Shown in pieces: positions 4,402-61,510 of a stretch of DNA of 64,000 nucleotides. The first letter of the stretch is position 1. Every line of letters starts with the position of its first letter. The stretch covers positions 37,634,001 through 37,698,000 of the forward strand of contig OZ320322.1 in NCBI GenBank assembly GCA_976226885.1, given 5' to 3'. Both the position numbers and the translations under genes were made by a program. The notes below the pieces were generated by a model. The model saw only the letters and a list, made by a program, of their open reading frames with translations. It ran no database searches and was not told where the DNA came from. The DNA is from Iphione sp. A-MEVVRFRX5. Taxonomy: Eukaryota.

Positions 4402-4833
<432 letters not shown>

Positions 4834-9000: not shown

Positions 9001-12000
9001 TCAAGAGAATTGGTTAGGATGTTGAAGTGTCAGACTGACTCCTTCAGGCCTGATGTCACCTCTGCGTTGGATTGTTTCTTCAGAAGTCAACAGTGCCTAG
9101 TGTACAGTGTACAATGTGTGTGAAAAGCATTTTTTCTCAAATCGGACTACTCTGCCACCAATTACCCAAGCTGTCGGGGGAGTTCCTTGTGGTTGTCTGC
9201 CTACAAGTAGGTGGTCTCCTTCTCCGAATGCTGGCGCTTCAAGTGAGAGGTAATGAAGGATGTAGCAATCAGCTCGTCCCTCTGGCCGCAGCTTAGCCAT
9301 CTCAGAGAGGCAGAGCGGAGACACCCACACACCTGCGAGCTCATTGTTAGTGGACATCTGCGCAAATGAACGTTTGCGGGCCGGAGATGTTGGGATGGGT
9401 AATTTACTTCAGTTGTCAGTGCCTTTTCGTGTTTTTTTTGGCTTTGCAAGCCCCCCCCCCCACCCCTCCCACATCCAGATTGCTTGTATTTCCTTGAGTA
9501 TTTCTTAGAATAAACATTATCTCCTATATTGAAAGACCCTCTCCTCCTTCCATCCCTCTCGATTTTTGCTCTTCCATTTCTTTCCACCTTTCTACATTTT
9601 ACACCCTTTTACCAGCGTTGTTCTCTCGATCTCACTTCTTTTCTTTACCGTCTCCCTCCATGTACATGTTCTTCTAATTTTGTCGGTACAACTGTTTATG
9701 TATCTGTATACCCATGCCACCATTAAAAAAGGGAATGTATTACATAGATAATCACCTAGGGCAATGAGATGTGAGAAGTCAAGGCTGAGCATGACTACAG
9801 GTTTTCTGTATGACCGTTTATCAGACTTGATTGACATGCATGTAAGCCAGAGGAAGTGGTGATTAGTTAATGGCTTTACTCTCTTGTAACACGACGAAAT
9901 CAGTAGAACGCACCAAGATGCAGTTCTCTGATGAATCGCTACACAAGAACATGTTCCTGGGTCGTCTCTGTCAGCTTGTTGGCGAACTGACACGACAACT
10001 TGATGACGGGCCGAGTTGACCACTGTACTTACATCGCCACTCCCTCTCTCTCTCTTCCTACGTCATACACACGTGTAGCTTTTTGCATTTGCCGAAATTG
10101 TCTTTTACGATTTGTTGCCAAGTAGCGGTGTCACTTAATCTTGACACCACCAGTTGTCAGCCTCAACTAAATGCATTTTTTCCATTCTGAGGCTGTATTT
10201 ATATCCTACATGATGTCTGTTACACTAAACTGTACATGCGCTTTCAGTTGGTTACAGAAGTAAATGGCTTGCCTGACAAAGCCCAGTCGACACCCAGTAG
10301 GCTGGGGACGTACTTAAACAACCAGCACATGAAGAAATGAGTGCAAATGTCCTCGAGAAACTACTCACGTGGCCGAAGCACTCAATCTCCTTGCTAACCA
10401 TGTTAAACGTTCAGAGCGTCCCCTACACCCCCCATCTCTTCTCCCTGGTGTGGTTGCACCTGGAAGTGCGCGTACAGCGAACGCAAGGTAAACATTCTTG
10501 GACCAGTCAGTTGTGACTAGTTAGCGTCAGGTGGGGAGATAGCCTCCTCTTAGTAATTCATATTTATTTGGCTGCGAGCGTGTACTCCGACGGCTGCCGT
10601 GTCATTGCAAGCGTGAGGCAGTCAGTCCGGTAGTGTTAAAACTAGGCCAAGCGCCCATGCCTCCCTGCCTGATTGACCAGCCTAGGCGTGAGAAAGACCA
10701 GCCTCCCCGCAGCCTCGCAGAGATGATGGATTGCTCGTCGTGCCATCATTGCTTTCCCTTGCTTTTACCCTCTAACACACTCCCGTGCACTCGGCCTCGA
10801 GTATTGATACAGCCCCTCAAGGCCCGTTGGCCGCGCCCAGTCAAGCTGACAAAATCAAATCCCATGCAAAGGATAGAGCCATTAACCCACTCTCTGATTA
10901 TAAGCACGCTGAGGAGAAATGCGCTGCGTGATTCCCTCTCCCGTTCTCTATGGCTGAAGCGATTCTTCTGTTTCTGTTTATCCTTTCTAATTCATTTGAT
11001 TTTATTCCACGCTGAGGAACAACGGAGATGAATCAATCCCTTTAAAAAAACCCAGTCCATTCATCTCAGTGGAGCTTTTCTGATTTGAATCTCTTGAATG
11101 AATGTTTGCAGTATTTATTGGATTAGCTTTTTTCGGCTGAAATCGAACCATAACTCATGTTTTTTTGGGGGGTAAGACATTAGGTCTATATACACATTTG
11201 GACACTATCTGGCTTCTTCTATGTTTCTTGCTAGACAATCCGACAACATTGATCAAACAAAGCAATCACTTTAATCAAATGCAGAGTGAAACGGGCATTT
11301 GATCATGTGCTTTTGAAGGTAGCTATGATGTTTTGCATGGCAGGGAACTAATTGGAAAAGTAAGAAATTCTGGAACGAGTAGAATTTTTATTGCAGCGTT
11401 TTCTCTTTCAGGATAATTCCCATTCCTCCTCGCTTCTTGCCTCTTTTCAAACACCATCTCCTTCGTGTCTTCATTTGCTTTGTCTTTCATGTCTCCTTTC
11501 CCATCTTCTCAAAATTCTTTTGTTTCTCCTCCCAAATCCCTGCTACTTTATATTTCTGTGCATACTCTTTCTTGTCCCTCCTTTTATATATCCCTTTCTC
11601 TCCTTGCTTTTTGTTGAATGTGCCCCTGTTGTGTCTCTGTATACATATATGTCTATTAAATTGATATTCCCAATGCTTATATCCATTTGTCTGCCTGTTC
11701 TTCTTTCTATTCGGCCATTACTGTTAGTTCTCTCTCATTTCTCAATGCCCTTTGCTTCTTTTTTTAATTCTCGGGAGTCTTTCACATCATATACTCTTTC
11801 TGTTTCTCCGGCCCTTTGTGCGCATAAGTCTGTCCTCTCACTGTCTCTCCCGCAATTTTATGAGTATCATGTTCCTGTCAGTCTCATTTTATCTCACTCG
11901 CTGTCTCTCATTCACTTACCGGTAGGACCATTCTAGCACTTCTCGTGGCTGTACCTAGCTGAGATTTGGCACACAACCCGGGTTTGGAGTGCGCTGCAAC

Positions 12001-13371: not shown

Positions 13372-14005
13372 CTCCGTTGATGGGCCGCATCCAGGGGTAG
13401 ATGGGGATGTTCTGTGGCTGTCCGCCAGTCCCTCCGCCGTTCACGACGCCCGGTCCGGCCAAGGCTCCAGCAGGGTGATTGTATGGGTGGTGGTGAGGGG
13501 GCACCATGCCGTGGTGGCCGCCAGGGCTGGACGTGGCCGGCCCACCATGCCCGGGGCCCCCGCCGCCACCTCCGCCGCCCACCGGCCCGCCCATCCCGGG
13601 ACTCTCGGCGGGTTGCACCTTGCAGGGGCCTAGCTCGTCCACGGGCGAATATTGTGGCCCATGGGAGCCATTCGTCTGTCCGGCAGGCTGACTGTACTGT
13701 GTACCAAGCGCTGAGGTCTGCTGATAACTGGCCGGGTTGACAGCCGAACTGGCCGCCAAACTTGTCGTGTGCGCGCCCGGGGTGTAGCCACCTTTCCCCG
13801 TGATGGGCCGGATATCCAGCCTGTCAAACGGGGGAAACCTAGGGAACCCCGGGTGCTGGGGATCGCCTTCTGCGTAGACGCCAATGCCGCCCGTGCTGGC
13901 GCCGTAGAAGGCCGGATCATACTTGCCTTCCTGTGTCATGAACGGGTCCTGCGTGGTGCCATTGGGCAAGTTCGCCGGGATGATATTTCCGTAGTAGGAG
14001 CTCAT
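13372..14005 (-). CDS. Lox5: Lox5 Hox gene, coding exon 1
   Basis: Starts MSSYYG (SSYF-type N-terminal motif of central Hox proteins), has Gly and His/Pro-rich tracts, and ends NIPIYPWMRPING with the YPWM hexapeptide. 634 nt (phase 1) joins exon 2 (338 nt) for 972 nt, i.e. 323 aa plus stop. Confidence 0.94.
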
Positions 14006-14026
14006 AATACCTGCAATTCAGTCCAA

Positions 14027-14120
14027 TGATTTGTGGCCAGTCCTGCGTTCTAAAACATGTCGACAAGATTGACCAAATAATATCGGCCATAATCAAACCC
14101 ACGTGACGCCTTCGACCAAT
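14027..14120 (-). promoter_or_regulatory. Lox5 proximal promoter / 5' leader motifs (E-box CACGTGAC, CCAAT, ACAAATCA)
   Basis: CACGTGAC at 14100-14107, CCAAT at 14116-14120 and ACAAATCA (minus) at 14034-14027, all within about 115 bp of the ATG. Confidence 0.5.
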
Positions 14121-17100
14121 CGGTGATAAGATAGCGGTCACATGCCCACGGCCCGGATAGAACTGGGTCACGCCGGCATACATTACTAGAAAACCCATTA
14201 ATTATAGCTCCCAAACGCGTGCTGGACCAAAATACTCGCAGCTGAATGGGATTGCACCCGGGCTCCGACTGGCCGGCGTTTTAGTGGCCGACACACAGAC
14301 CTGCTATTGTGGTAATGCGATGCCAGTCCCCTAAATCCATTTGGACGCTTCCCGGTCAGTTATAAGGGGGTGATTTCCAAGGAGGAGTAAGAGGGAAGGT
14401 GGGAGGAGGAGGGGAGGGAGGATGGTCAGGGCGAGCTGGAACGAGTCAGATGGCAGTGGGAGTGAGGGTATCCGGTATGGGGTATATGGGGGTGGGGAGA
14501 TGCCCTAGACGCACCACGTATACAGGAGGGTCTATGTCCTATTGCCCCTACTCATTGATCAAGTTCATTGTCCAGGGGAGTCGCAGAATGTGCTATTGAG
14601 CGCCATAACCTAGCTACACGACACACCCCTAGCTTGGACATTAGAAGGCTAATCACAGGTCGCCAGTCGAGCTCAAAGAAAATATATACCACCCCTAAAC
14701 CCACCCCTCCAGACACTGGAAGAAGGTGTAGTAGCCATAGCATAACCGGTTTAGGGTTGAAACAGATACGGATTTCCCGCCAAAGACAATCAGAGCCATT
14801 CATTGTCCACCCATCCCGGAGCCGGTCGTGAATCATCTGTTCATGGCGAAAAACAGACCCTTTATTGGCTGCTTTCTTTACTCGGAGACTCAGAAGACCC
14901 ATCTGAAAAAGGGACCAGTCCTAAGCCTGACCGGTGACCCTCCAAGAGGCAAAATAATGTAATAATATGGTGTTTTTAAACATGCTTCATTTGCCGTGAT
15001 TAAAGGCTGGTTGGGTGGCGGTGTTTGTTTTGGACCCAAGTGGGGTTAAGTAGAGGATGTTTTATGTGGTCAGTCGTGTGAAATCATTTAACCTCGGGGT
15101 TATCCGTAGCCATTCCTCACTCCCATCACGCCCGCATGCTCTCTCCTAAAGAGTCCCCCACCCATACCAGTCTCCGCCATTCCCTCCTGCCCTCTGTTTC
15201 AGTCAATATTCCCTTCCCAAGGTCCAGCAGACTAAGATATTGACAAGGCTAAACCGTTACACGTTAACATGCTATGACACAGATTGCTAACCATGGATGG
15301 GTCGTATACATGTCGGAGGCAGTTGGGAAGCTCATTGTTACAAGAGGTGGACCCTTACACCCGCATCAGGCACCAGCCATCACGAAGGGATGTAAATCAC
15401 CACACGGATATGAACTTCAATGTGAAAAGTTCAACTTGTTAATACCTCGGTGTACAAGAACGGAGACCACACGATTCATCGCATTGTTTTACACTTTTAT
15501 GTATGTAGTGTACTATCTACAGATGCATAGTGGTAAACACTACCATTGCCTAATTATGAGGAAAAGAAATGCACAAACAGAATACCCTACCGGGGAAAAA
15601 AACCTCTGTTAATTGGTTCCCGTGAAGGTAATATACAGTCCCGAATAATAGTCTTTCCTCCCACAAACAGCACTGCTTTGTTGGCATGAAGACAGGTCTA
15701 TAATAGTTTAATATATTTCCCATTCAATTTAAAGTAAATTGCCAAGGAGACATGGCCAAACATAAAGGAGATCTGACATATTGGCTAATTTGTGGCATGT
15801 TGAAGCTGTTCCACACCCCAAAAAAGGGAGCCCCACCTGCTTGAATGCTTCATTAGAACTCGCCGTTATAACAATATGTCCCCAAACCTGTACACCATCA
15901 GCCAGGCTGCCAGTCAGGGGGGGCTCAGGCCTGAACAATGTGATTCTAGCCGGTAGCATCAGCAGCAGTAGCAGTAGCCACGTGTCCCCATGACAACGCT
16001 AACTGTAGGATATACTATTTCGTGGGCGCTGAAACACATAAATGTCAAATAACAATTACACACGGACACCCATCCTAGCCATTGTGCAGACTCCTGACAA
16101 TACAGCATTACTATAATCAAGAGCGTGCCACTTGGTGGGTCGGTCGAGGGGGTGTCTGTGAGGGTTTATCTCCGGTCCACACCCACCCATTATAGGGGCA
16201 TAAATCCTCCAGGGGAAGAGGGCCGCGCCACGGGCAGGTAGACGGAGGGAGGAGGATGAGAGGGGTTAAGGACTAGCCAGACACTCACAGGTGGTGCCTC
16301 CTACTACTAAACGCATCATTCTTCCAACCACGATACTACATAGATACCTCTTCTACGACAGACTCATCAGGGGAGAAAGATGGAATTGATGATACGTACG
16401 GGGAAGGGTCGTGAAAAAGAGTGGATGGCAGGCTGATATGAAGAAGGATATACTATTATGAAGAGAACGAACATGGATGGGGGGATACCAGCGAATGAGC
16501 AGAACATTTGCAAATTTGAAGGAGGAATGTATGATAGACCAATTGGGATGGGGTGGCACCAAGGTTAGTTTGATAGGTAGCAATGCACAAAAAGGAGACG
16601 ATGGTTTGGTAATGATGATGATGATTATTACAAAAAAAACTACAGGGAAAGGGTAGACTAATAGAGGGACGAGACAAAGAAGAGCGATATGGTGTGTTTT
16701 TTCTTGAACACAAATCCTCTTTTATGAAAAAATACTAAGAAATCCGGCCATAAATCATCAGTTTACCGATTAGTCAGACCAGGCAGGTCCATTGTCCTGC
16801 AGTTCATCAGTCGTTCCGCAGAGGGAAGTCACGAGGGTTTGGTGGGAGGAAGAGAAACAAAATGAAGGATAGTAAAGTAATAAGCAAACGAGGTACAAAA
16901 GACAGGATGATACGTATAAAAGAGAGCCGGAGGAATGAAGACAAGTGAGATAAGTGGCACTGGTTGGACTGAATAAAACAGACCAAAAGAAAGTGTTGTT
17001 TTAAAAGAAAGGGGGGAGAATATAGCAGAATGAAAGGAGATATCAAAGTGTAACAGCTGGTGGTTGGATACAAGTCTTGTACCGACGCAGCTATAAGACT

Positions 17101-23200: not shown

Positions 23201-25886
23201 TCGAGAAAATATACACTCTCCAAGCGCAGAAGGTTCAGTTAACATTTTCGTCTTGTCTCTTTTTCAGGCATCGCACAGTGGTACGAAAGGACGAGATCCG
23301 GCTGAGGGCAAAGAAATTCTGCAGAGATGACACATAGATGAATTAAAAATCAGGGCGCAGAGAATGCATTGCAGAGTGCATTTGGGGCATTATTTGCGAG
23401 CTACTTTGAAGTACTCTGCATGCAAGGTCATGCTTTTCTCTGGTCATATTCAATTTCCTCATTGATTCTCCAGCAGCGGTCGCCTTAGCCGAGGAAACGT
23501 TGACTAATTGTTTGATCTCGGTTCAATTAGGCCCACTGCTGTGCCCATGTTGGGAGAGAAGGGGGGTGGGTGGATTCTGGATCAAGGAGGGGTTGTCCTG
23601 TGCTCGTCGCTCCTCAGGGCCAGCATATGGTAGGGTCAACTTCTCTCTCCCCACAGAGCAGCAAGGGATTATTGGCTCTTTATCGCTCGTCCTTTGTTTA
23701 ATATGGTGTGAAGAGTTGCTCGAGGAGACTGTGGAGCAGGAGAGATGCCCGCTGGTGACGCTGTTGGCTTGTGCCTGATGGGTTGAGGCGAATTTGGGGT
23801 GAAAGTGGGGCTAGAGCGCAGGGAGTTTGATTTATACGACGCTTGATCCCCCTTGGGTGACAACGGCAATATGTCCGCTGGGGTCAGCCACACACGGAGG
23901 GGTCGGGGTAGCCGACACGCCGCCCCCTTACCCCTACCATCTCCCCAGTTGGGGTGGTGAGATGGGGCTAAATGTTAGTTGCTGCAACGGTCGCCTATTG
24001 AACGCCAATGAGGATTAATCATAGGAATTTTTGGTGATTTAATGCCATAATCCTTTGGGGGATCAGAGCAGGTGGGCTGGAGGGTTAGTAGGTGGATGGG
24101 TGGCAGTCGGGAGCAGCTTTGAGGCGGGGAGGGTGGGTGGGAGGGCTTGCGGGCACAGTGTCCGATATTCTGTCTCTACACGGTAACGGTAGACGAGAAA
24201 AAACATGGCCAAAACACCGTCAACGGAATTGTGCAGGATTGAGACTTGATCACAACCCAAACCAGTCTGATAGCTCCGGTAGAGCTCCTCCAATGGCTAG
24301 ATTGATAGAAATGGTGCCCTGCAGTGAGAATGAGATGCCAGAGGTCGGGTTTGACATTTCAAGTACGAAAAGCGGCTCGGCAAAGCGCGGCTCGCTTCGG
24401 TCGAACTGTCTAGACAGCGCACTTTCATTTGCGCTCCTCTTCATAAATAGTGCAGTAGAAGCGGGAGTCCGTTCGACAAATTGAACCTAATGACATTGCG
24501 TTTCAAGTTGCTTTTAGTTCCCATATTTTTATGCCCGTCGCTCGCGACTGGAATCACTGCATTCCACAGCCGCACGCTCGCACTGAACTCGAACCCGTTG
24601 CATGCGAGACCGTTTGCCTCTAACTGCCGCAGTGGGTGCGCGGCGCTGCAGTCAAGCGGAGGGAACCCGAGACGAGCCCGAACCCGAGGAGGCGAAAATC
24701 TCTCAAAACACCTCAAACGAAATTCCTTCCCTACGTAGAGTGTTGCCAGATATTTCTTGCATATCCAAGCCGGTTGCAGTTTACCCTAATTAAATGTAAG
24801 GAGGTAATTGCGATGTATTATCTGGGTCGCGGTGAAAAGTGGAAATGTTCCTGTGACTTTGCTTAGTTAACAAACGACATTGGGGTCCTCCGCACTCGCC
24901 TGACCCAGTGTCGATACTGACGGAGATGGTCTGGGCCTTGGTAGACCCCATCCCGGGATTCATACATCATCACTGGCGATTCCCAGAAGGAAGAACACTA
25001 TTATACTTTAGTACGGGTGATGGGAGAATATGACGGGGGGAATCAGTACATAGTATTCTGAAGTTGCATTACCTGTGTTCAAGTGGGCTATGGTGAACAT
25101 TTCAGGGTCTAGAAAATATAATATGAAGACGGTGCACAACACGGTCGAAGAAAAATGTACAAATTTCAAACACGTGATTTCTATGATATTTTGTATGTTC
25201 CCATGAATGTGTCGTCGTTGTTGAACTTCACTGAAATCTGTTAGGGAGAAAAAAAGACACAATAAACGAAGCTTTTCTTGCACAGGTGGTGAGATTATGC
25301 ATGTATTATACATGTACCAATTTACACATATAGGCCTGAATACTGATAAATGATCTTGCACGGTGTGAAGAAGGAAAAAATCCGAATGACCTACTTCACT
25401 TAGGCCTGAAAGAGATATATTTCGATCCGAAAGTTCAGCTGTTTTTCGATCCTGCTTCATCTATGAAGGGAGTACGACAATGGAATCTATTGTCAGGTAC
25501 TTGGATGGGGTTGCGGAAGAGATGCTTCAGATGACTTGCGAGACAACATGTACTAACTCAGTTGGTCTATGAGAATTACCAATGAAAAACATTCTGGATC
25601 GGTTGATTGGTTTCTCAATAAACGTTTTTCATTCATTCATTCAAGATAAGCTTGCACTAATAAAATGTAAACGTTTCTCGATGACACGGTCCCACCTCCA
25701 TACTTTACAAAGGGGCAAGCAGAAACACTTATAGGTACATATTTCCCCAGAAACACTTATAGATACATATACGTATATGTATACCGATGTATGTATATTC
25801 CCATATTTGACTACAAAAAAAATGGTTAGACGTCAGAATAATAAATGTCTATTGAACAAGTAATAGACTATGGATGGATCGCTTTG

Positions 25887-54076: not shown

Positions 54077-57000
54077 CCCCAAGGAGGAATGGAGGGAGGG
54101 AGACGTCTGCTTGAGGCCAGCTTGAGAGAAGGAGCAAGTCAGGTCAGGCATGCTCGCCTTACTGCACAAACAGTGAACACTAGGCACCACCCCCTGCCGC
54201 TCCCTCTAAAGCTTTATGAACAGGCGCCTAGGGTGCTGATGCAGGCTGTGGTGGGTTCGGGCACATTGTGTTGATAGGTACCTATGTTGAAAAGGGGAAG
54301 ATAGGTGTGTGTGAGGGAAAAGACGTGGCAGTGGGGAACCGGGGGGGGGGGCTGCATTGCTGCAGAGCGAACCTCTCGGATCAAGTGGATCCCACCCCAC
54401 TGACAGCTTCAAAGGGATCACCCTCTAACTGGGAGGTAGACCCCTATTGAAGGCATGTCGAGGGCTTGGGCGGGGGGGGGGGTAAAGTTCACCGAGGCAA
54501 CGGTCTCAAGAATCCTATAGTTGCCATCTAGACCAACACATACAGCAAACCGCGCTGATCGGAGACCTCAGCTAACCCCTGTACTTCAGCGCGTCCGCTC
54601 TCGTCGACAGGATCCTGACACAGCTGCATTTATCTGGGGGGACGTATGTGTATACAGATAAAATGCGTTGTTTATCTCCAGGTCGGTGTAGATCATGGCT
54701 GTGGTCGCGGGCTGAGATTGATTCTGGTGACGGCGCCCTGTACGCCTCAAGAAAGATCAGGGTATGAACCACCTCGGAGGAAGGGTAGGACGAAGGGAGG
54801 GAGGGAGGATGGTGTTGGGGTGGGAGGGGGGAGGGTCAGGGTGCTGAGATTAACCAGAGCTTTGACCGAGCTACTGCTTTTATTCACCATTGGTATTTAT
54901 TGCTATGTGTCATCGGGACTGAAGGGATCATCTTACAAACAAAAATTAAATTTCCTTTTTTTCGAACAGGAATATGCAACCAACTGGCTTATCGCAAAGT
55001 TTGTTGATAAATATATAAAAACTGGATTGAAACTGTTTTACTGTGTAAAGCTTTTATTCCCAGGTGTTTCCTTTTACCTAGAGTTCCCTTTCAAGTCTCA
55101 GCAGGTACATCGAGGAGGTGATTTGTTATATGAACATAATAATACCAGGAGCTCCATGGGTTTTGTTCTGGCGGGAAGTTTAAGAGATGTCATCATGCAT
55201 CTTCATACATCTTAACGACATACGATGCCCACCAGTCCTTTTCCTTGCTCATTTTGCATGGGTACACGATACAGGTTAAACCAATAAACTTTTGTTTACA
55301 TGACAGAAATTATATTCACTTCAAAGCGATTATACAAATTTGATCCTGTTACTGTATGTTATTTGTAGGAATTTAGAATAGACTAAACAGTTTGTGAAGC
55401 AGCATCAGATCTCAGGGGAGTCTACCCTTCCAGGTAGCGTGCAGGGGAACGAGAGTGACCTCTGTCGTTCTGAAACGCAAGCGTAGAATGATAAACTCTG
55501 AAACATCCGTCGTGAAGGCGGATCCCGTCTTCATCTTTATCTTTTCGGGTTCGATGCTTGTTCAAGTAAAGATGTGGTTCGTTTGAAGTGATTATCACGA
55601 TCTGTCGTAGTTTGCATACTAGATGATCTAAACGATTTAAGTGATAATTTGGCACGCATCTGTATGTGTACGGGCATGTTAATATTGATTTTGTGACAGT
55701 TTACGAATGCAGGACTATCCAGGTAATTCTATAGCGGTTTTATACTAAACGGTCCATAACTTACATGAAAACTGAATGCTCATACGACACTGTTTGAAAC
55801 AAAAAAAGTGCAACACTGCCCGTTGGTGGTCTTCGCCAAAAATCCTACCCATGAAGTGTCTTGGGGGTACAGACCGACCGACTAACCATAGTACCCAACC
55901 ACTGGCCCCCATCTCGGGGTATATTTCCAAGCGTTCTCGGTTGAGGAAACGTTTGATCTTGGGCCAGAACAAGGTGACTTTGATGGCCGCTGTCCAGTAG
56001 TGCTGGCACGGGAGCCGCTGCGGTCGTTGGGTCGGCCTGTTCGCCCGTCTTGCCGCTAGGTGGGGCCAAGTTGAACCCTGTGGTCATCGTCGGCCGGAGG
56101 GCAGTGGGACGGGGGTCCAGGGAGGGCAGTTACACGGTCGGGTAGTGGTGGGTCACGACACGGTCCCACGGTGAGGCAGCAGGCCGAGCCATTTGGTGTA
56201 GTGACATGCCCACCCGGAGTCCAACCACCCCACTCAACCCTACACCCCAGGATCTCCTACAAGCCCCCACCCCCAAGCTACCCCCTCCAAACAGAGAGGA
56301 AGTCAGCAGAATGGCACTCTGTCGCCTCAGAGCAGCTCATCTCAATTATGAGTCCATTTAAAGCCACACGTGTTCTGTGAGCAGATGGGCCGCCGCGGGC
56401 GTTGAAATGGATGCAAATTGAAATAAAACTGGTCAGTGGAAATGGCCACTGGACCGGTCAGCTAATGTTATCAGCCCTGTCCCGCTGCCTTCTGTCTGAC
56501 TACAGGGACAGTCTGGAGGGGCCTGGAGAGGGTCCAGATAAGAAAAGGTCATTATTAGTATAAAGGGATAATGGCTAACAATCACCTCCCAATGGATAAA
56601 GTGATAAGGAATTAGCAGTGAGGGCCTCACGAGGGGCATTTCAAATGCCAACCTCGGGGACGTAGTAGACTAACATGGACCTTAACACTCGAGGATGCCC
56701 CTTGACCAGTCGTGGGCCCTTTGTGCTCCTTAAGCCACGAAGTTCAGAGATGGGTGAGAACATAAAGGCTCTTGCCCCTTTTTTTGTGACAAGGAAATAA
56801 TCGTACATGTACTCTTTTTTTAACTTACTTAGGATGGGTTGGACTGATCTATTTTTACTGATGAATCATACAACACATTAAAATTTAAAGATCTACTCCA
56901 TTCATGAACCAAGAAAGAAATGACACTTTAGTCTTTCGAGATTGGACGCATACAAACACCCACCAAAACCTGCAACCCCCATCAAAAGTCCGAACCCCGA

Positions 57001-57926
57001 ACGACACTTCCATACAAGGCTGACAAACGCGATTTCAGCGGGAGGTTCATGCCGGGGGGTTCCTGCCACCGTCGTCATAGCGATAACAACGCACACCCAC
57101 AAGTAAACGGATTAGCCTGATAAATCGATGACAAGTCCCTCCTGCTCCCCAGATACCTTTGAATGAACCTGCTGTGTGTCGCTACTGTGAGGAGGAATGA
57201 CTGCGAACTAGAATTCGTTGGCAATTGAAAAGACAAAAAAAAGTAAACCGACCACGCATCCATCTCGACACACAGACAAGGTTCGAATTTAATTTGAGAC
57301 GCAAAATGACATGTAAGTATGTATAATAGCTGGGGATGTAGATATCTGATACAGACACAAATGGTCAATATATGGTCGTTAAGATGGTCAAAGTAGATCT
57401 GAAGGTGTATACAGGTACTCGTCATTGTCATTACTGACATAGGATGGGAGGGAGGACGCATGCGCTGTGACCTGAATTTGAAGCCAGGTCATTCCACTCG
57501 AAGCCACAGGTTCTTAGTCTTGGGCAGATAAATACCAGCCGTCGGCGAGATGTATCATTTCTTAAAGTCAATGGGACGTTCCACGTTACAAAGGGTAGTG
57601 CAGACAAACATTTGGTCTTAAGTCGGACGTCTTGAAGCTATTAAACAATTCGCTTTTCTGCCCCAGTCGACAGTGTCAAGCGTTACAAATGGTAGCAAGT
57701 CATGTGTGGAGAAGTGCCTGGAATGAACCCTCCACATGCAGACGGAAACCCTCCGATAAGCAAGTCTAAGCAGTGTCATAATTAGGCGGCCAATTTTCGT
57801 TCGTTAAGCCAATGTTTACCGTCCGTTTTTTTCTTTGTGTGCGTTCCCTTCAATCGCAACCTCTTATAGCGTAATAGCTAAATGCATGCAGAGACCTTGG
57901 GGTCAAGCCCTCATAGCCGCCACCCA

Positions 57927-57975
57927 GGGTCAAAGTCAGGTCAGCCAATCACATCACGCATAAGCTGTGACGTCA
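57927..57975 (+). promoter_or_regulatory. DR5 (RARE-like) + CCAAT + CRE cassette
   Basis: GGGTCA-AAGTC-AGGTCA at 57927-57943, CCAAT at 57945-57949 and TGACGTCA at 57968-57975. Confidence 0.45.
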
Positions 57976-58552
57976 CGCGAGGCGTAACGTGCAGCAGAGA
58001 GTGTCTAGGAAAAGACAAAGGAATCGAAAAGAATTACAATTAAACTATATGTTCTCTTTTCTGGCATTTTTTCATATCAGTATATCAAATATAACATCTC
58101 AAAGGAAGTTCTCTGGGGTTAAAATTCTTAAGAAATTAAAGTACAACGAAAATATCAAGTCTCAAAAGGAACCATTCTTTGGAGTACATTTTCAGGTTCA
58201 CTGACCCGTTCACGTTCGATGTTTACCAATTACACACCACCGTATCAAACAGAATACCCAGAAAGCAACATATTAGAATATACATGCATTTTAGGTGAGC
58301 AAATATTTACAATTCGTTTGAAAACAATAAAATCGCAGAGACAGTATGGACGATAATAGGAGAAGGAAGGCGTTAGGTCTTGACCATCACGTAGCATTAG
58401 GATACCGGAAGCCAGCCGTTGCTCGTGCATTCGATGTCGTAAAATAACAACAGAGGCAGGACACAAATAAAGCCGGAGAAGAAGAAGAAGAAGCTTATTA
58501 CAGCAGGTCTGAGGCGTGCCGGAGAGGTGAGTGAAGCATGGCATTTGTTCCG

Positions 58553-58611
58553 TGAACTCTCTAGAACAGGCTTGTGGTCAGACATAATCACAAGCTCGGT
58601 TCTACAGGGTG
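58553..58611 (-). ncRNA. mir-10: mir-10 family pre-miRNA hairpin
   Basis: 5p arm CACCCUGUAGAACCGAGCUUGUG (58611-58589) carries the miR-10 seed ACCCUGU and resembles miR-10 UACCCUGUAGAUCCGAAUUUGU. It pairs with 3p arm CACAAGCCUGUUCUAGAGAGUUCA across a 12-nt loop, and the stem extends to about 58545-58620. A CNNC motif (CUUC, 58536-58533) lies 17 nt after the predicted 3' cut. Confidence 0.92.
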
Positions 58612-61228
58612 CACGGGCAAAGCCCGTTCCCATAGCAACCGCATCACATGCTTACAAGCGCTCACTTGTCCCTTGCGTTCTACTGCTGCTGCTGCTGCTT
58701 CTGCTGGTGCTGATGGTAAAAGGAGGTGAATTGATCCCTTCTTGGTCGTCATGGAAACTGATGCCTGGTCCCTGAGAGATAGGAGCCTTCCTGTGGTGGG
58801 GAACTAACATGGTCCTGCGCCCAACCCGCCAGGATATGCGGGCCGATGCATATGGGACACGAACCTAAAGTGAAAGTGGTATGGACTCTATGGCCGACCG
58901 CCTGCCGGCCGTCCCCCACCACAGGGGATACTATCATCTGGCAAGGAGGGCCGCTCGGCACACCTCGGTCGTTGTTGGCTCCAGACAACACCCACCCACA
59001 CCCACACATCCGACCCCATGTGCTAGATTAATTAGGCAGTGACTTGAAAGGCGAGTTCACGCCCGTGTCAAGTAGGTGTAAAATTCAATGGGTCCCTGGG
59101 ACAACGCATGCAGAGCCAGGGGCTGAGGCGCACATCGTTCAAGTGAAGCCCACGCACGAGCTCCTCGGCTGTAAACATGGCCAAACAAACTCAACACCAG
59201 GTGGGCTCCTGGGGAGGGGGGGGGGCTGGTCGTCCCCTCCCCCACATACGCACACAAATGAACCTGCAGAAAGAATTGTAGTGATAGTACTAGTCTTCAC
59301 CTCGTCCATAGTCCACGAACCACTCCAACAAAGGAAACAAATACATGCAAACACAATCGCTGCAGGAACAAAGCTTAACCCGAAATCCATTCCATAATTC
59401 CGGTATTCTTTAATATCAACAAATACAACATGTTTTTTTTTACCCTGTCAAACATAGTTGTTGTATAATATATTGAGAATACATATTCACCTGCGAGACT
59501 GATTTTTGTTATTTTAGACGTTTAGTTATGTTCTAGAACCGTCCATAGAGGGAAAAAAATCCAACCTACAATCTACAAGAATCCTATCCCAGCACACTTG
59601 ATATTTGCATACCAAAAAAGGCAATTAAAGGTTTAACATCCTTATGGTACCACCATGTGTATTTCTACTTGGACGAAAAATACTATTTTGAAGTCATGCT
59701 CGTTAAATTTTATTCTCGCACGGAGAAAAAAAACACACACACAATTAAGTACTTCAAACAAAAATTAAGGTATGTATATTCTTGTTTCTTAACTAAATGT
59801 TAAAGAGAATAACACTACCTGCAATTAGATTGCTATGGAAAAATGTGATTTAAAAAAATTACTCTCAAAGAGCTATACGTCGGTTAAACATTCGCATAAA
59901 AAATCGATGTATAATGTGTATAATAGGAGACCTTTCACAAAGGTCCAAATTACCCTTGTTACCTGTCTTCTCAGACATTGTGCCTTGAACACAATAAAAT
60001 AACTTTTTAAAAGGTCAACTTTTGCGTCAATGCTTCCACCATGTGCGTAGATTTAAAAAAAACGCTACTCACTCGTCTTTGACAGTATACCAACTCAATA
60101 ATGCAAAGTCACTCTGTGCAATGCATATTCTCTTACAAAATTATCTCGGTTAGTTACTACATTTAAGACTTATCCTGTAACATTGTGTAGACATGAACAT
60201 GTATAGCTTTCGTGGATTCTTTCTCTTCATATACAAAGGCTGGAGAGACTCCTTATCTTACAAGTGCATAAACCCGTCCATCACCATACCACGGGTACAA
60301 TGTTTCAACCAGTACTATAGAGCCAGGGGTCATTATAACCACCTGTCGCCTGCCGTGGTAACCCTGGCTAAACTTGACGGATTACACTTATGCTTTGTTG
60401 AGACAAGCCACTCAGGTGCCCTGGGGCGCCTAACCCATTCTATACCAACCTTAGAATATGCCTGTTAGCTTTTGTTGACTGGTACCTTTTTCACAAGCTA
60501 TACCTTGTAGACTCTATCACTTAACCATCCATTACCGCTACCATCTATATATTGATGGGGATGGACCCTACCCTTTCTCCTTTGTTGATTTATACCTTTT
60601 AGAGAATGTCAGTCCAGACTGCGCTAACTATGTGCTACATGTAATCTTTATGGATCTATCATTTGACCTCCAACTTGATATAACAGGTTATGTATGGTAA
60701 TAATTATTGCTACATTGGAACAAGGACGGGATCAATACTTACCCTATCGTTTAGGCTAAAATACATGCGATTAGAATAATAGGTACATGTGATAAATAAT
60801 ACTCCCATGGACACAACTCTACAGAGAGAGAAAAAAACTACCATAATGTGTCGATATAATGATTGTCGATCGCGATCATGACAGTAAATCCAATTTACAA
60901 TGCGTAGGTCATTCAGCTTCCAGCAGTATATAATAATGAGTTGTGTTCTTACCCTTAGGACAAACTACCTCTTTTACTTCACGCGTAAGACGACTTTAAA
61001 AGATCAAATCTGCTCTGAAAACATTCTTGTCTTCATGTGTGTAAAGTACTAAAAGGAAGTTTTGTGTTGTATATGTGTGTTGCCTAGTGTTGAGTCTTTG
61101 TGCTTACGAACCATGTTTAAACCTTCACCTATCTTGTTGAAGTTTTCTCATCTGTGGTGCTACCCTCACTTTTAATGGCCGCCCTCACTCAGGCCATCTG
61201 TTTGCTCAAAGACAGTCCCTGCCAATGG

Positions 61229-61510
<282 letters not shown>

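What the first reader, a model, noticed from the sequence alone, without database searches (positions are those of the whole stretch)
58545..58620. mir-10 paralogue at a non-canonical Hox position (between Antp-like gene and Lox5)
This unannotated hairpin has the miR-10 seed, ~59-nt pre-miRNA geometry, UGUG at the 5p/loop junction and CNNC at +17. It is co-oriented with the Hox genes, 2.6 kb past the Antp-like stop. Canonical mir-10 lies between Hox4 and Hox5, and mir-993 between Hox3 and Hox4. Extra mir-10 paralogues are known in some lophotrochozoans and amphioxus, so this may be one of those or a new copy. The predicted 5p begins with C rather than U; if processing starts one base later, the seed shifts to CCCUGUA.
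Basis: partly seen in the sequence, partly recalled or inferred. Interest (0 to 1): 0.85.

Follow-up and report, generated by a model that had tools for sequence, protein, structure and literature searches.

The report
Known annelid Hox-cluster mir-10 paralogue
The hairpin is a real, deeply conserved microRNA gene of the miR-10 family sitting just downstream of the Antp Hox gene, but the same gene is already present and described in other annelid worms, so it is a new copy of a known thing rather than a discovery.

Summary
A 59-nt pre-miRNA hairpin lies on the minus strand at 58553-58611, 2.6 kb past the stop of an Antp-type gene and 44.6 kb upstream of Lox5, both on the same strand. It has the miR-10 seed, UGUG at the loop junction and CNNC at +17.

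It is not new. I found the orthologous hairpin at the same position in Capitella teleta, Paralvinella palmiformis and three unnamed assemblies. One of these is the closest available relative of the window species. The 22-nt 5p core is identical in all of them, the loop varies, and the lower stem shows compensatory changes.

[quoted passage not shown] Extra mir-10 copies in the annelid Hox cluster are published.

Two things go beyond the finding:
- In four annelids the opposite strand of this hairpin encodes, 22/22, the mature sequence of a second described miRNA, Efe-Mir-10-P7. In the window and its relative only the Hox-sense arm is conserved.
- A conserved 8-mer miR-10 site lies just before a polyadenylation signal downstream of Antp.

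Expression could not be tested because no sequencing run was listed.

The parts
58540..58624 (-). pri-miRNA stem: lower stem, miRNA duplex and loop
   Evidence: MFE fold -38 kcal/mol, z = -4.2. In the consensus structure of 6 orthologues 95.7% of cells are paired, against 49% or less when the partners are slid by 1-3 columns.
58553..58611 (-). predicted 59-nt pre-miRNA
   Evidence: Geometry from the fold with a 2-nt 3' overhang. The same register as the Efe-Mir-10-P1f precursor defined by reads.
58589..58611 (-). 5p arm, the predicted guide CACCCUGUAGAACCGAGCUUGUG. The core 58589-58610 is invariant in all orthologues.
   Evidence: Identical 22-mer in L003, L004, L006, L008, L009 and L012. 21/22 to Efe-Mir-10-P1f_5p. 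Unique in the window.
58577..58588 (-). apical loop, 12 nt
   Evidence: Loop sequence and length vary among the orthologues, as expected for a miRNA.
58553..58574 (-). predicted 3p (star) arm CAAGCCUGUUCUAGAGAGUUCA
   Evidence: 18/22 to Efe-Mir-10-P1f_3p*. It differs at 8 of 22 positions from the 3p arm of the closest relative, L012, while the 5p arm is unchanged.
58533..58536 (-). CNNC motif (CUUC) 17 nt 3' of the predicted Drosha cut
   Evidence: Read. The block GCTTCACTCA is conserved at the same distance (+17) in L012.
61229..61479 (-). last coding exon of the Antp-type gene (homeodomain and stop codon). Exon 1 lies beyond the window end.
   Evidence: Best hits are Hox7/Antp proteins. The derived substitutions are shared with L012.
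59441..59448 (-). 8-mer match (ACAGGGTA) to the ACCCUGU seed, 26 nt before an ATTAAA signal at 59414-59409. This is probably the end of the Antp 3'UTR.
   Evidence: It is the only such 8-mer on this strand of the window. It sits in a 19-nt block that is perfectly conserved with L012, which also keeps the ATTAAA.
13372..14005 (-). Lox5 coding exon 1 (ATG to GT donor)
4402..4739 (-). Lox5 coding exon 2 (homeodomain, KLTGP parapeptide, stop codon)

Best explanation
This is the window species' orthologue of an annelid Hox-cluster paralogue of mir-10, lying in the Antp-Lox5 intergenic region and transcribed in the Hox direction.

The inferred pathway is canonical. A primary transcript folds into the hairpin; it could be read-through past the Antp poly(A) site about 0.8 kb upstream, or an independent transcript. 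Drosha cuts about 12-13 nt above the base of the stem, helped by the CNNC at +17 and the UGUG at the loop. Dicer releases a roughly 22-nt duplex. The invariant 5p arm is loaded as guide, with the miR-10 seed ACCCUGU. If the cut falls one base later the seed is CCCUGUA. Its target range therefore overlaps that of miR-10, with different 3' pairing at nt 12, 17 and 18. One likely target is Antp itself.

Shown: the hairpin, its conservation, its position, its identity to a read-supported Eisenia miRNA, and the conserved 8-mer site. Inferred: expression in this species, the exact ends, the origin of the transcript, and the targeting.
For: - Fold and motifs are as described.
- Orthologous hairpins lie 2.3-4.3 kb past the Antp stop, on the Antp strand: Capitella L003, Paralvinella L004, ENA L006 and L012. 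There are two further copies in metagenome contigs.
- In Paralvinella and in the L001/L012 contig, Lox5 follows on the same strand. In Capitella, Antp lies 17.2 kb 5' of Lox5 (PMC2603591).
- Apart from the homeobox, the hairpin is the only block conserved between the window's Antp-downstream DNA and L003, L004 and L006.
- The 5p core is 22/22 in all copies, the loop is free to vary, and two lower-stem pairs show compensatory changes.
- Efe-Mir-10-P1f has 5p UACCCUGUAGAACCGAGCUUGU and 3p* CAAGCCUAGUCUACAGUGUUCA, both from small-RNA reads. They match the window's sense arms 21/22 and 18/22.
- Strand: in the nearest relative, L012, the sense fold is -45.2 against -34.0 for the antisense, with G:U pairs that exist only on the sense strand. 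The 3p arm has drifted at 8 of 22 positions while the 5p arm is unchanged. The CNNC block is conserved at +17.
- The 8-mer seed match is conserved with L012.
- Literature: PMC3394115, PMC6160089, PMC12257675.
Against: - There is no expression evidence for this species; no run was listed.
- The Rfam mir-10 score is below the gathering threshold.
- In the window itself the plus strand folds better (-44.2 against -38).
- The first base of the predicted guide is C. Argonaute disfavours C at that position (established knowledge), so the real 5' end may differ.
- I could not establish which MirGeneDB 3.0 name (P7, P8 or other) belongs to this locus. The positions of the paralogues are given only in a figure I could not read.
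- The genomic position of Efe-Mir-10-P1f in Eisenia is not known to me.
Confidence: 0.85

Rival explanations
1. The gene is on the plus strand, antisense to the Hox genes. The functional product would be the antisense 5p (Mir-10-P7-like) or the antisense 3p (the reverse complement of the invariant arm, with a mir-993-like seed AAGCUCG).
For: The plus strand folds better in the window (-44.2 against -38) and in L003, L004 and L006. In L003, L004, L006 and L009 the plus-strand-equivalent 5p arm is 22/22 identical to the read-supported Efe-Mir-10-P7 mature sequence. Rfam mir-10 also hits the plus strand, at 26.6 bits.
Against: In the window the P7-type arm has 4 changes, 2 of them in the seed (18/22). 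In the close relative L012 it is changed further, while the sense 5p arm stays invariant. The L012 antisense fold is 11 kcal/mol weaker than the sense fold. The CNNC on the sense side is conserved. The Eisenia reads for P1f are sense 5p and sense 3p.
Confidence: 0.08
2. It is the canonical mir-10 (Mir-10-P1), and the flanking genes were misnamed: they are really Hox4 and Hox5.
For: The seed is the same, and 19 of 23 positions match the canonical sequence as given for Efe-Mir-10-P1e.
Against: The downstream gene has the Lox5 parapeptide KLTGP. The upstream homeodomain is Antp/Hox7-type, and its Capitella counterpart is the named Antennapedia protein. The arm carries the substitutions diagnostic of P1f (A12, G17, C18) in all six genomic copies.
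Confidence: 0.03
3. It is a chance or decaying hairpin with no function.
For: There are no reads, and the Rfam score is below threshold.
Against: The arm is 22/22 identical across annelid lineages as distant as Capitellidae and Terebellida, inside otherwise unalignable intergenic DNA. Pairing is register-specific. No shuffle of the window gives a match.
Confidence: 0.02

Closest known systems
[quoted passage not shown]
   Same: The 5p arm is identical at nt 2-22, the 3p arm matches 18/22, the hairpin size is the same and so is the processing register. 5p is the mature arm and 3p the star, by reads.
   Different: The first base is U in Eisenia and C here. Loop and star arm differ. That table treats P1f as an Eisenia-specific duplicate of mir-10, whereas the synteny found here places this arm at an ancient Antp-downstream locus. 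The position of P1f in the Eisenia genome was not available to me.
The Antp-downstream hairpin of Capitella teleta (KB310318.1, about 317,874-317,948) and Paralvinella palmiformis (JAODUP010000042.1, about 318,083-318,155). These are probably the 'mir-10 duplicates in the Capitella Hox cluster' of PMC3394115 and one of the five Hox-cluster Mir-10 paralogues of pleistoannelids in PMC12257675.
   Same: Same position, same strand relative to Antp, and an identical 22-nt 5p core.
   Different: In those species the 3p arm is also invariant, and its reverse complement is exactly the Efe-Mir-10-P7 mature sequence. In the window that arm has diverged.
Efe-Mir-10-P7 (efe-mir-10e; node of origin 'Capitella + Clitellata'; probably the 'annelid-specific mir-10c' of PMC6160089)
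   Same: It derives from the same hairpin lineage. Its mature 22-mer lies on the antisense strand of the locus in four annelids.
   Different: The window's antisense arm matches only 18/22, with two seed changes, so the window copy is not a P7-type gene.
Canonical mir-10 (Mir-10-P1), between Hox4/Dfd and Hox5/Scr (for example in Terebratalia; 10.1101/058669)
   Same: Seed ACCCUGU, Hox-sense orientation, 5p arm as guide.
   Different: It sits two genes further posterior in the cluster and differs at nt 1, 12, 17 and 18.
Drosophila iab-4/iab-8, a Hox miRNA locus processed from both strands (established knowledge; cited as precedent in PMC3384580)
   Same: It is a possible model for the annelid locus, where each strand carries a conserved, read-supported mature sequence.
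   Different: It is an unrelated miRNA family at a different cluster position. Bidirectional use of the annelid locus is an inference here, not shown.

Membership tests
[quoted passage not shown] | Hairpin with a roughly 22-nt duplex, a roughly 60-nt precursor and a lower stem of 11 bp or more | tested here: met
[quoted passage not shown] | 5p arm ACCCUGUAGAACCGAGCUUGU with seed ACCCUGU | tested here: met
   21/22 to Efe-Mir-10-P1f_5p, and 100% over nt 2-23.
[quoted passage not shown] | Lies in the Hox cluster downstream of Antp and upstream of Lox5, on the Hox strand, with orthologues at the same place | tested here: met
   Window; Capitella, Paralvinella, L006 and L012; PMC2603591.
[quoted passage not shown] | Small-RNA reads from both arms with defined 5' ends and 2-nt offsets in this species | not testable with these tools
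   The look-up of sequencing runs listed no run, so read laying could not be used.
Rfam RF00104 mir-10 | Score at or above the gathering threshold of 47.5 bits | tested here: not met
   29.6 bits, E = 1e-4. The Capitella orthologue scores 32.3 bits. The model represents the canonical mir-10.
Canonical mir-10 (Mir-10-P1) | Position between Hox4 and Hox5 | tested here: not met
   It lies between Antp (Hox7) and Lox5 (Hox6).
Mir-10-P7 as named in the 2018 Eisenia table (efe-mir-10e) | Mature sequence UACACUGUAGAAUAGGCUUGUG | tested here: not met
   The window plus strand matches 18/22 with 2 seed changes and gives no blastn hit. The feature is met 22/22 on the antisense strand of L003, L004, L006 and L009.
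mir-993 (Mir-10-P4) | 3p-arm mature sequence AGAAGCUC...; position Hox3/Hox4 | tested here: not met
   11/22 on the sense 3p arm and 16/22 on the antisense 3p arm. The position is also wrong.
mir-1991 (Efe-Mir-10-P6) | AUACCCUGUGAG...; lies between Post2 and Post1 | tested here: not met
   8/22. Position from PMC4138081.

The most novel reading that the evidence does not exclude
The Antp-Lox5 hairpin of annelids was ancestrally a two-strand miRNA locus, like Drosophila iab-4/iab-8. The Hox-sense strand gave a miR-10-seed guide (the P1f type). The antisense strand gave Mir-10-P7.

Lineages then partitioned the two functions. Capitella, Paralvinella, L006 and L009 keep both arms invariant. Eisenia, after its Hox duplications, carries two loci that each keep one arm intact (P1f and P7). 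The clade of the window species kept only the sense product. Together with the conserved 8-mer site, that product would feed back on Antp.
Probability: 0.4. Interest if true: 0.6.

Novelty: new member of a known kind. Interest (0 to 1): 0.33.

Why it matters
As filed, this is routine. It adds one more species to a known annelid Hox-cluster mir-10 paralogue and shows that the Rfam gathering cut-off misses it.

Three points have modest wider value:
- Synteny shows that the 'Eisenia-specific' Mir-10-P1f arm is in fact ancient and belongs to the Antp-Lox5 locus.
- The same hairpin carries two different read-supported mature sequences on opposite strands, and they are conserved differently between lineages. 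This is a testable case of sense/antisense miRNA evolution and subfunctionalisation inside a Hox cluster.
- A conserved 8-mer site at the end of the probable Antp 3'UTR gives a concrete miRNA-Hox interaction to test in a spiralian.

Tried and rejected
- **Rfam, whole window at gathering threshold:** nothing.
- **Sequencing runs:** none was listed for 56500-61200. Reads, exact ends, strand and read-through from Antp could therefore not be tested, and read laying was not run.
- **Full-text searches for the mature sequences:** no paper. The match turned up only in a supplementary table.
- **Supplements of the Platynereis paper:** not held. The MirGeneDB 3.0 name for this locus stays unresolved.
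- **Outside annelids:** the snail Candidula has no mir-10-like hairpin within 10 kb past Antp, and neither does the Logan contig L007 within 5.6 kb. These are weak negatives.
- **Naming the organism:** this failed. The Lox5 exon-1 search gave at most 56% identity, and the only named hit is the annelid Paralvinella. An annelid is likely, because no mollusc or brachiopod Lox5 was hit and the locus is annelid-type.
- **Choosing the strand from CNNC or UGUG motifs in the distant orthologues:** not decisive, since both strands carry such motifs by chance or by palindromy.
- **Covariation statistics:** weak (54-80 of 500 shuffles reach the observed values) because the arms hardly vary. The register control is the informative one.
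- **Earlier scan notes by sequence or words:** blank.

Full report
**1. The observation**

Read on the minus strand, 58611-58589 is CACCCUGUAGAACCGAGCUUGUG. The 101-nt stretch around it folds into one hairpin at -38 kcal/mol. Its z-score is -4.2, and none of 200 shuffles folds as well.

With the 5p arm starting at 58611 and a 2-nt overhang, the 3p arm is 58574-58553 (CAAGCCUGUUCUAGAGAGUUCA), so the precursor is 59 nt. The 5p arm ends in UUGUG at a 12-nt loop. CUUC (CNNC) begins 17 nt after the 3p end, at 58536-58533. About 12 further pairs form the lower stem.

Rfam mir-10 matches 58547-58618(-) at 29.6 bits (E = 1e-4 in a 1.2-kb search). This is below the gathering score of 47.5, which is why the whole-window scan was blank. 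The 22-mer is unique in the window even with 3 mismatches allowed, and no shuffle produces a match.

**2. The neighbours**

The window holds two homeoboxes, both on the minus strand.

- The one at 4402-4739 is followed by the Lox5 parapeptide KLTGP. Its first exon, with the YPWM motif, is at 14005-13372.
- The one at 61229-61479 has an [10 protein letters not shown]-type homeodomain. Its best database hits are Hox7/Antp proteins.

Hox clusters are transcribed from posterior to anterior genes. An Antp gene upstream of Lox5 on the same strand is therefore the canonical spiralian order. The hairpin lies 2.6 kb past the Antp stop and 44.6 kb before the Lox5 ATG.

**3. Orthologues**

I used the Antp exon to fetch contigs from other species.

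| Locus | Source | Distance past Antp stop |
|---|---|---|
| L003 | Capitella teleta; its Antp is 100% identical to the UniProt Antennapedia entry | 2.3 kb |
| L004 | Paralvinella palmiformis; Lox5 follows 37 kb further on, same contig and strand | 4.3 kb |
| L006 | unnamed ENA assembly | 3.1 kb |
| L008, L009 | metagenome contigs found by an exact-pattern scan | no Antp on the contig |
| L012 | same contig as L001, the closest available relative of the window species | 2.47 kb (Lox5 about 35 kb downstream) |

In each of L003, L004, L006 and L012 the hairpin is on the Antp strand. I reached L012 by walking 35 kb upstream of Lox5 along the L001 contig. That relative shows 80%-identical non-coding blocks near Lox5.

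The 22-nt core ACCCUGUAGAACCGAGCUUGUG is identical in all six genomic copies. The loop differs in sequence and length. Two lower-stem pairs show compensatory changes. Of all cells, 95.7% are paired, against 49% or less when the partners are slid by 1-3 columns.

Between the window and the three distant species, the hairpin is the only conserved block besides the homeobox. This is the conservation profile of a functional miRNA gene.

**4. What is already known**

- A 2012 review states that mir-10 is duplicated within the Capitella Hox cluster, as in amphioxus. It also states that mir-993 and mir-1991 are Hox-embedded members of the family (PMC3394115).
- mir-1991 lies between Post2 and Post1 (PMC4138081), so it is a different gene.
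- The decisive match is in the Eisenia fetida small-RNA table (PMC6160089, supplementary file 2). [quoted passage not shown] The window's sense arms match these 21/22 and 18/22, and no other Eisenia Mir-10 paralogue comes close on both arms.

The Eisenia reads also fix the register. The guide starts at the base homologous to the window's C at 58611, and the star is exactly the arm predicted here.

The hairpin is therefore a new species' copy of a described gene. Which MirGeneDB 3.0 name belongs to this locus I could not settle, because the positions are given only in a figure.

**5. Which strand**

In the window and in the three distant species the antisense strand folds 5-7 kcal/mol better, because C·A mismatches become G·U pairs. 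Taken alone this is not decisive.

The close relative L012 settles it for this clade:
- its sense fold is -45.2 against -34.0 for the antisense, with G·U pairs that exist only on the sense strand;
- its 3p arm differs from the window's at 8 of 22 positions while the 5p arm is unchanged;
- the flanking block GCTTCACTCA keeps the CNNC at +17.

The Eisenia reads for P1f are also sense. I therefore take the Hox-sense 5p arm as the functional product here, with about 0.85 confidence that this is a functional sense-strand gene.

**6. An unexpected extra**

The same Eisenia table lists Efe-Mir-10-P7 (efe-mir-10e, node of origin 'Capitella + Clitellata') with mature sequence UACACUGUAGAAUAGGCUUGUG. 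This 22-mer is found, 22/22, on the strand opposite to Antp at the very same hairpin in Capitella, Paralvinella, L006 and L009. In those four, both arms are invariant.

In Eisenia, P1f and P7 are separate hairpins. Each keeps one of the two ancestral arms intact and has let the other drift. In the window and L012 only the sense arm is kept.

The simplest reading is an ancestrally two-strand locus that was later partitioned. miRBase already holds antisense miRNAs listed as separate entries for let-7 and mir-125 loci, in rat, cow and lancelet (PMC3384580). This reading is an inference, and it may already be known to the MirGeneDB curators.

**7. A likely target**

The only 8-mer match to the ACCCUGU seed on the window's minus strand is ACAGGGTA at 59448-59441. 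It lies 1.8 kb past the Antp stop and 26 nt before an ATTAAA signal. In L012 the same 8-mer sits in a 19-nt perfectly conserved block, followed by the same signal.

Capitella and Paralvinella each have two 7mer-A1 matches in the corresponding region, where 0.14-0.26 are expected. L006 has none.

This suggests that Antp mRNA ends about 0.8 kb before the hairpin and is regulated by miRNAs with the miR-10 seed, including its own downstream neighbour. This is inferred, not shown.

**8. Limits**

- No public run was listed, so expression, exact ends and read-through remain untested in this species.
It is probably an annelid, because the only named Lox5 hit is Paralvinella and no mollusc or brachiopod Lox5 was hit.
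- One mollusc and one unnamed contig lacked the hairpin within the DNA fetched, which agrees with an annelid-restricted gene but does not prove it.

**Verdict**

This is a new member of a known kind.

Noticed in passing
window 61229-61479 (-); L012 about 15700-15960 (-): The Antp homeodomain carries changes at positions that are invariant in the 10 other Antp proteins aligned: Y11S (F in L012), H36R, T41S and W56L (MKLKKE). The closest relative shares H36R, T41S, W56L and the C-terminal ...RPDL..DHM tail. This is a conserved derived Antp of this clade, not a pseudogene. The neighbouring Lox5 homeodomain is fully canonical.
   Followed up: partly
window 59441-59448 (-) with ATTAAA at 59409-59414; L012 13969-14059 (-): An 8-mer miR-10 seed match sits in a 19-nt block that is perfectly conserved with the relative, just before a conserved poly(A) signal. 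This is probably the end of the Antp 3'UTR and a miR-10-family target site.
   Followed up: partly
L003 18491-18512 (-), L004 15227-15248 (-), L006 13446-13467 (-), L009 (the strand opposite to the core at 9323-9344): The strand opposite to Antp at the orthologous hairpin encodes the read-supported Efe-Mir-10-P7 mature sequence, 22/22. This suggests a two-strand miRNA locus in these annelids. The window copy lacks it (18/22).
   Followed up: partly
window 14001-14377, 15042-15093, 15977-16219, 23691-23728: Non-coding blocks upstream of Lox5 are conserved with the L001 contig at 68-89% identity, the longest being 382 nt at 80%. They are candidate Lox5 5'UTR, promoter or enhancer elements.
   Followed up: no
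window 57860-57951, 58730-58787, 59063-59091, 59927-59964: Short non-coding blocks around the hairpin are conserved with L012 at 76-95% identity. The second lies 120-170 nt upstream of the hairpin.
   Followed up: no
L004 12178-12272 (-): Sub-threshold Rfam hits (mir-297 at 47.7 bits, mir-3149 at 36.4 bits) lie between Antp and the hairpin in Paralvinella. I did not look at the sequence, so I cannot say what they are.
   Followed up: no
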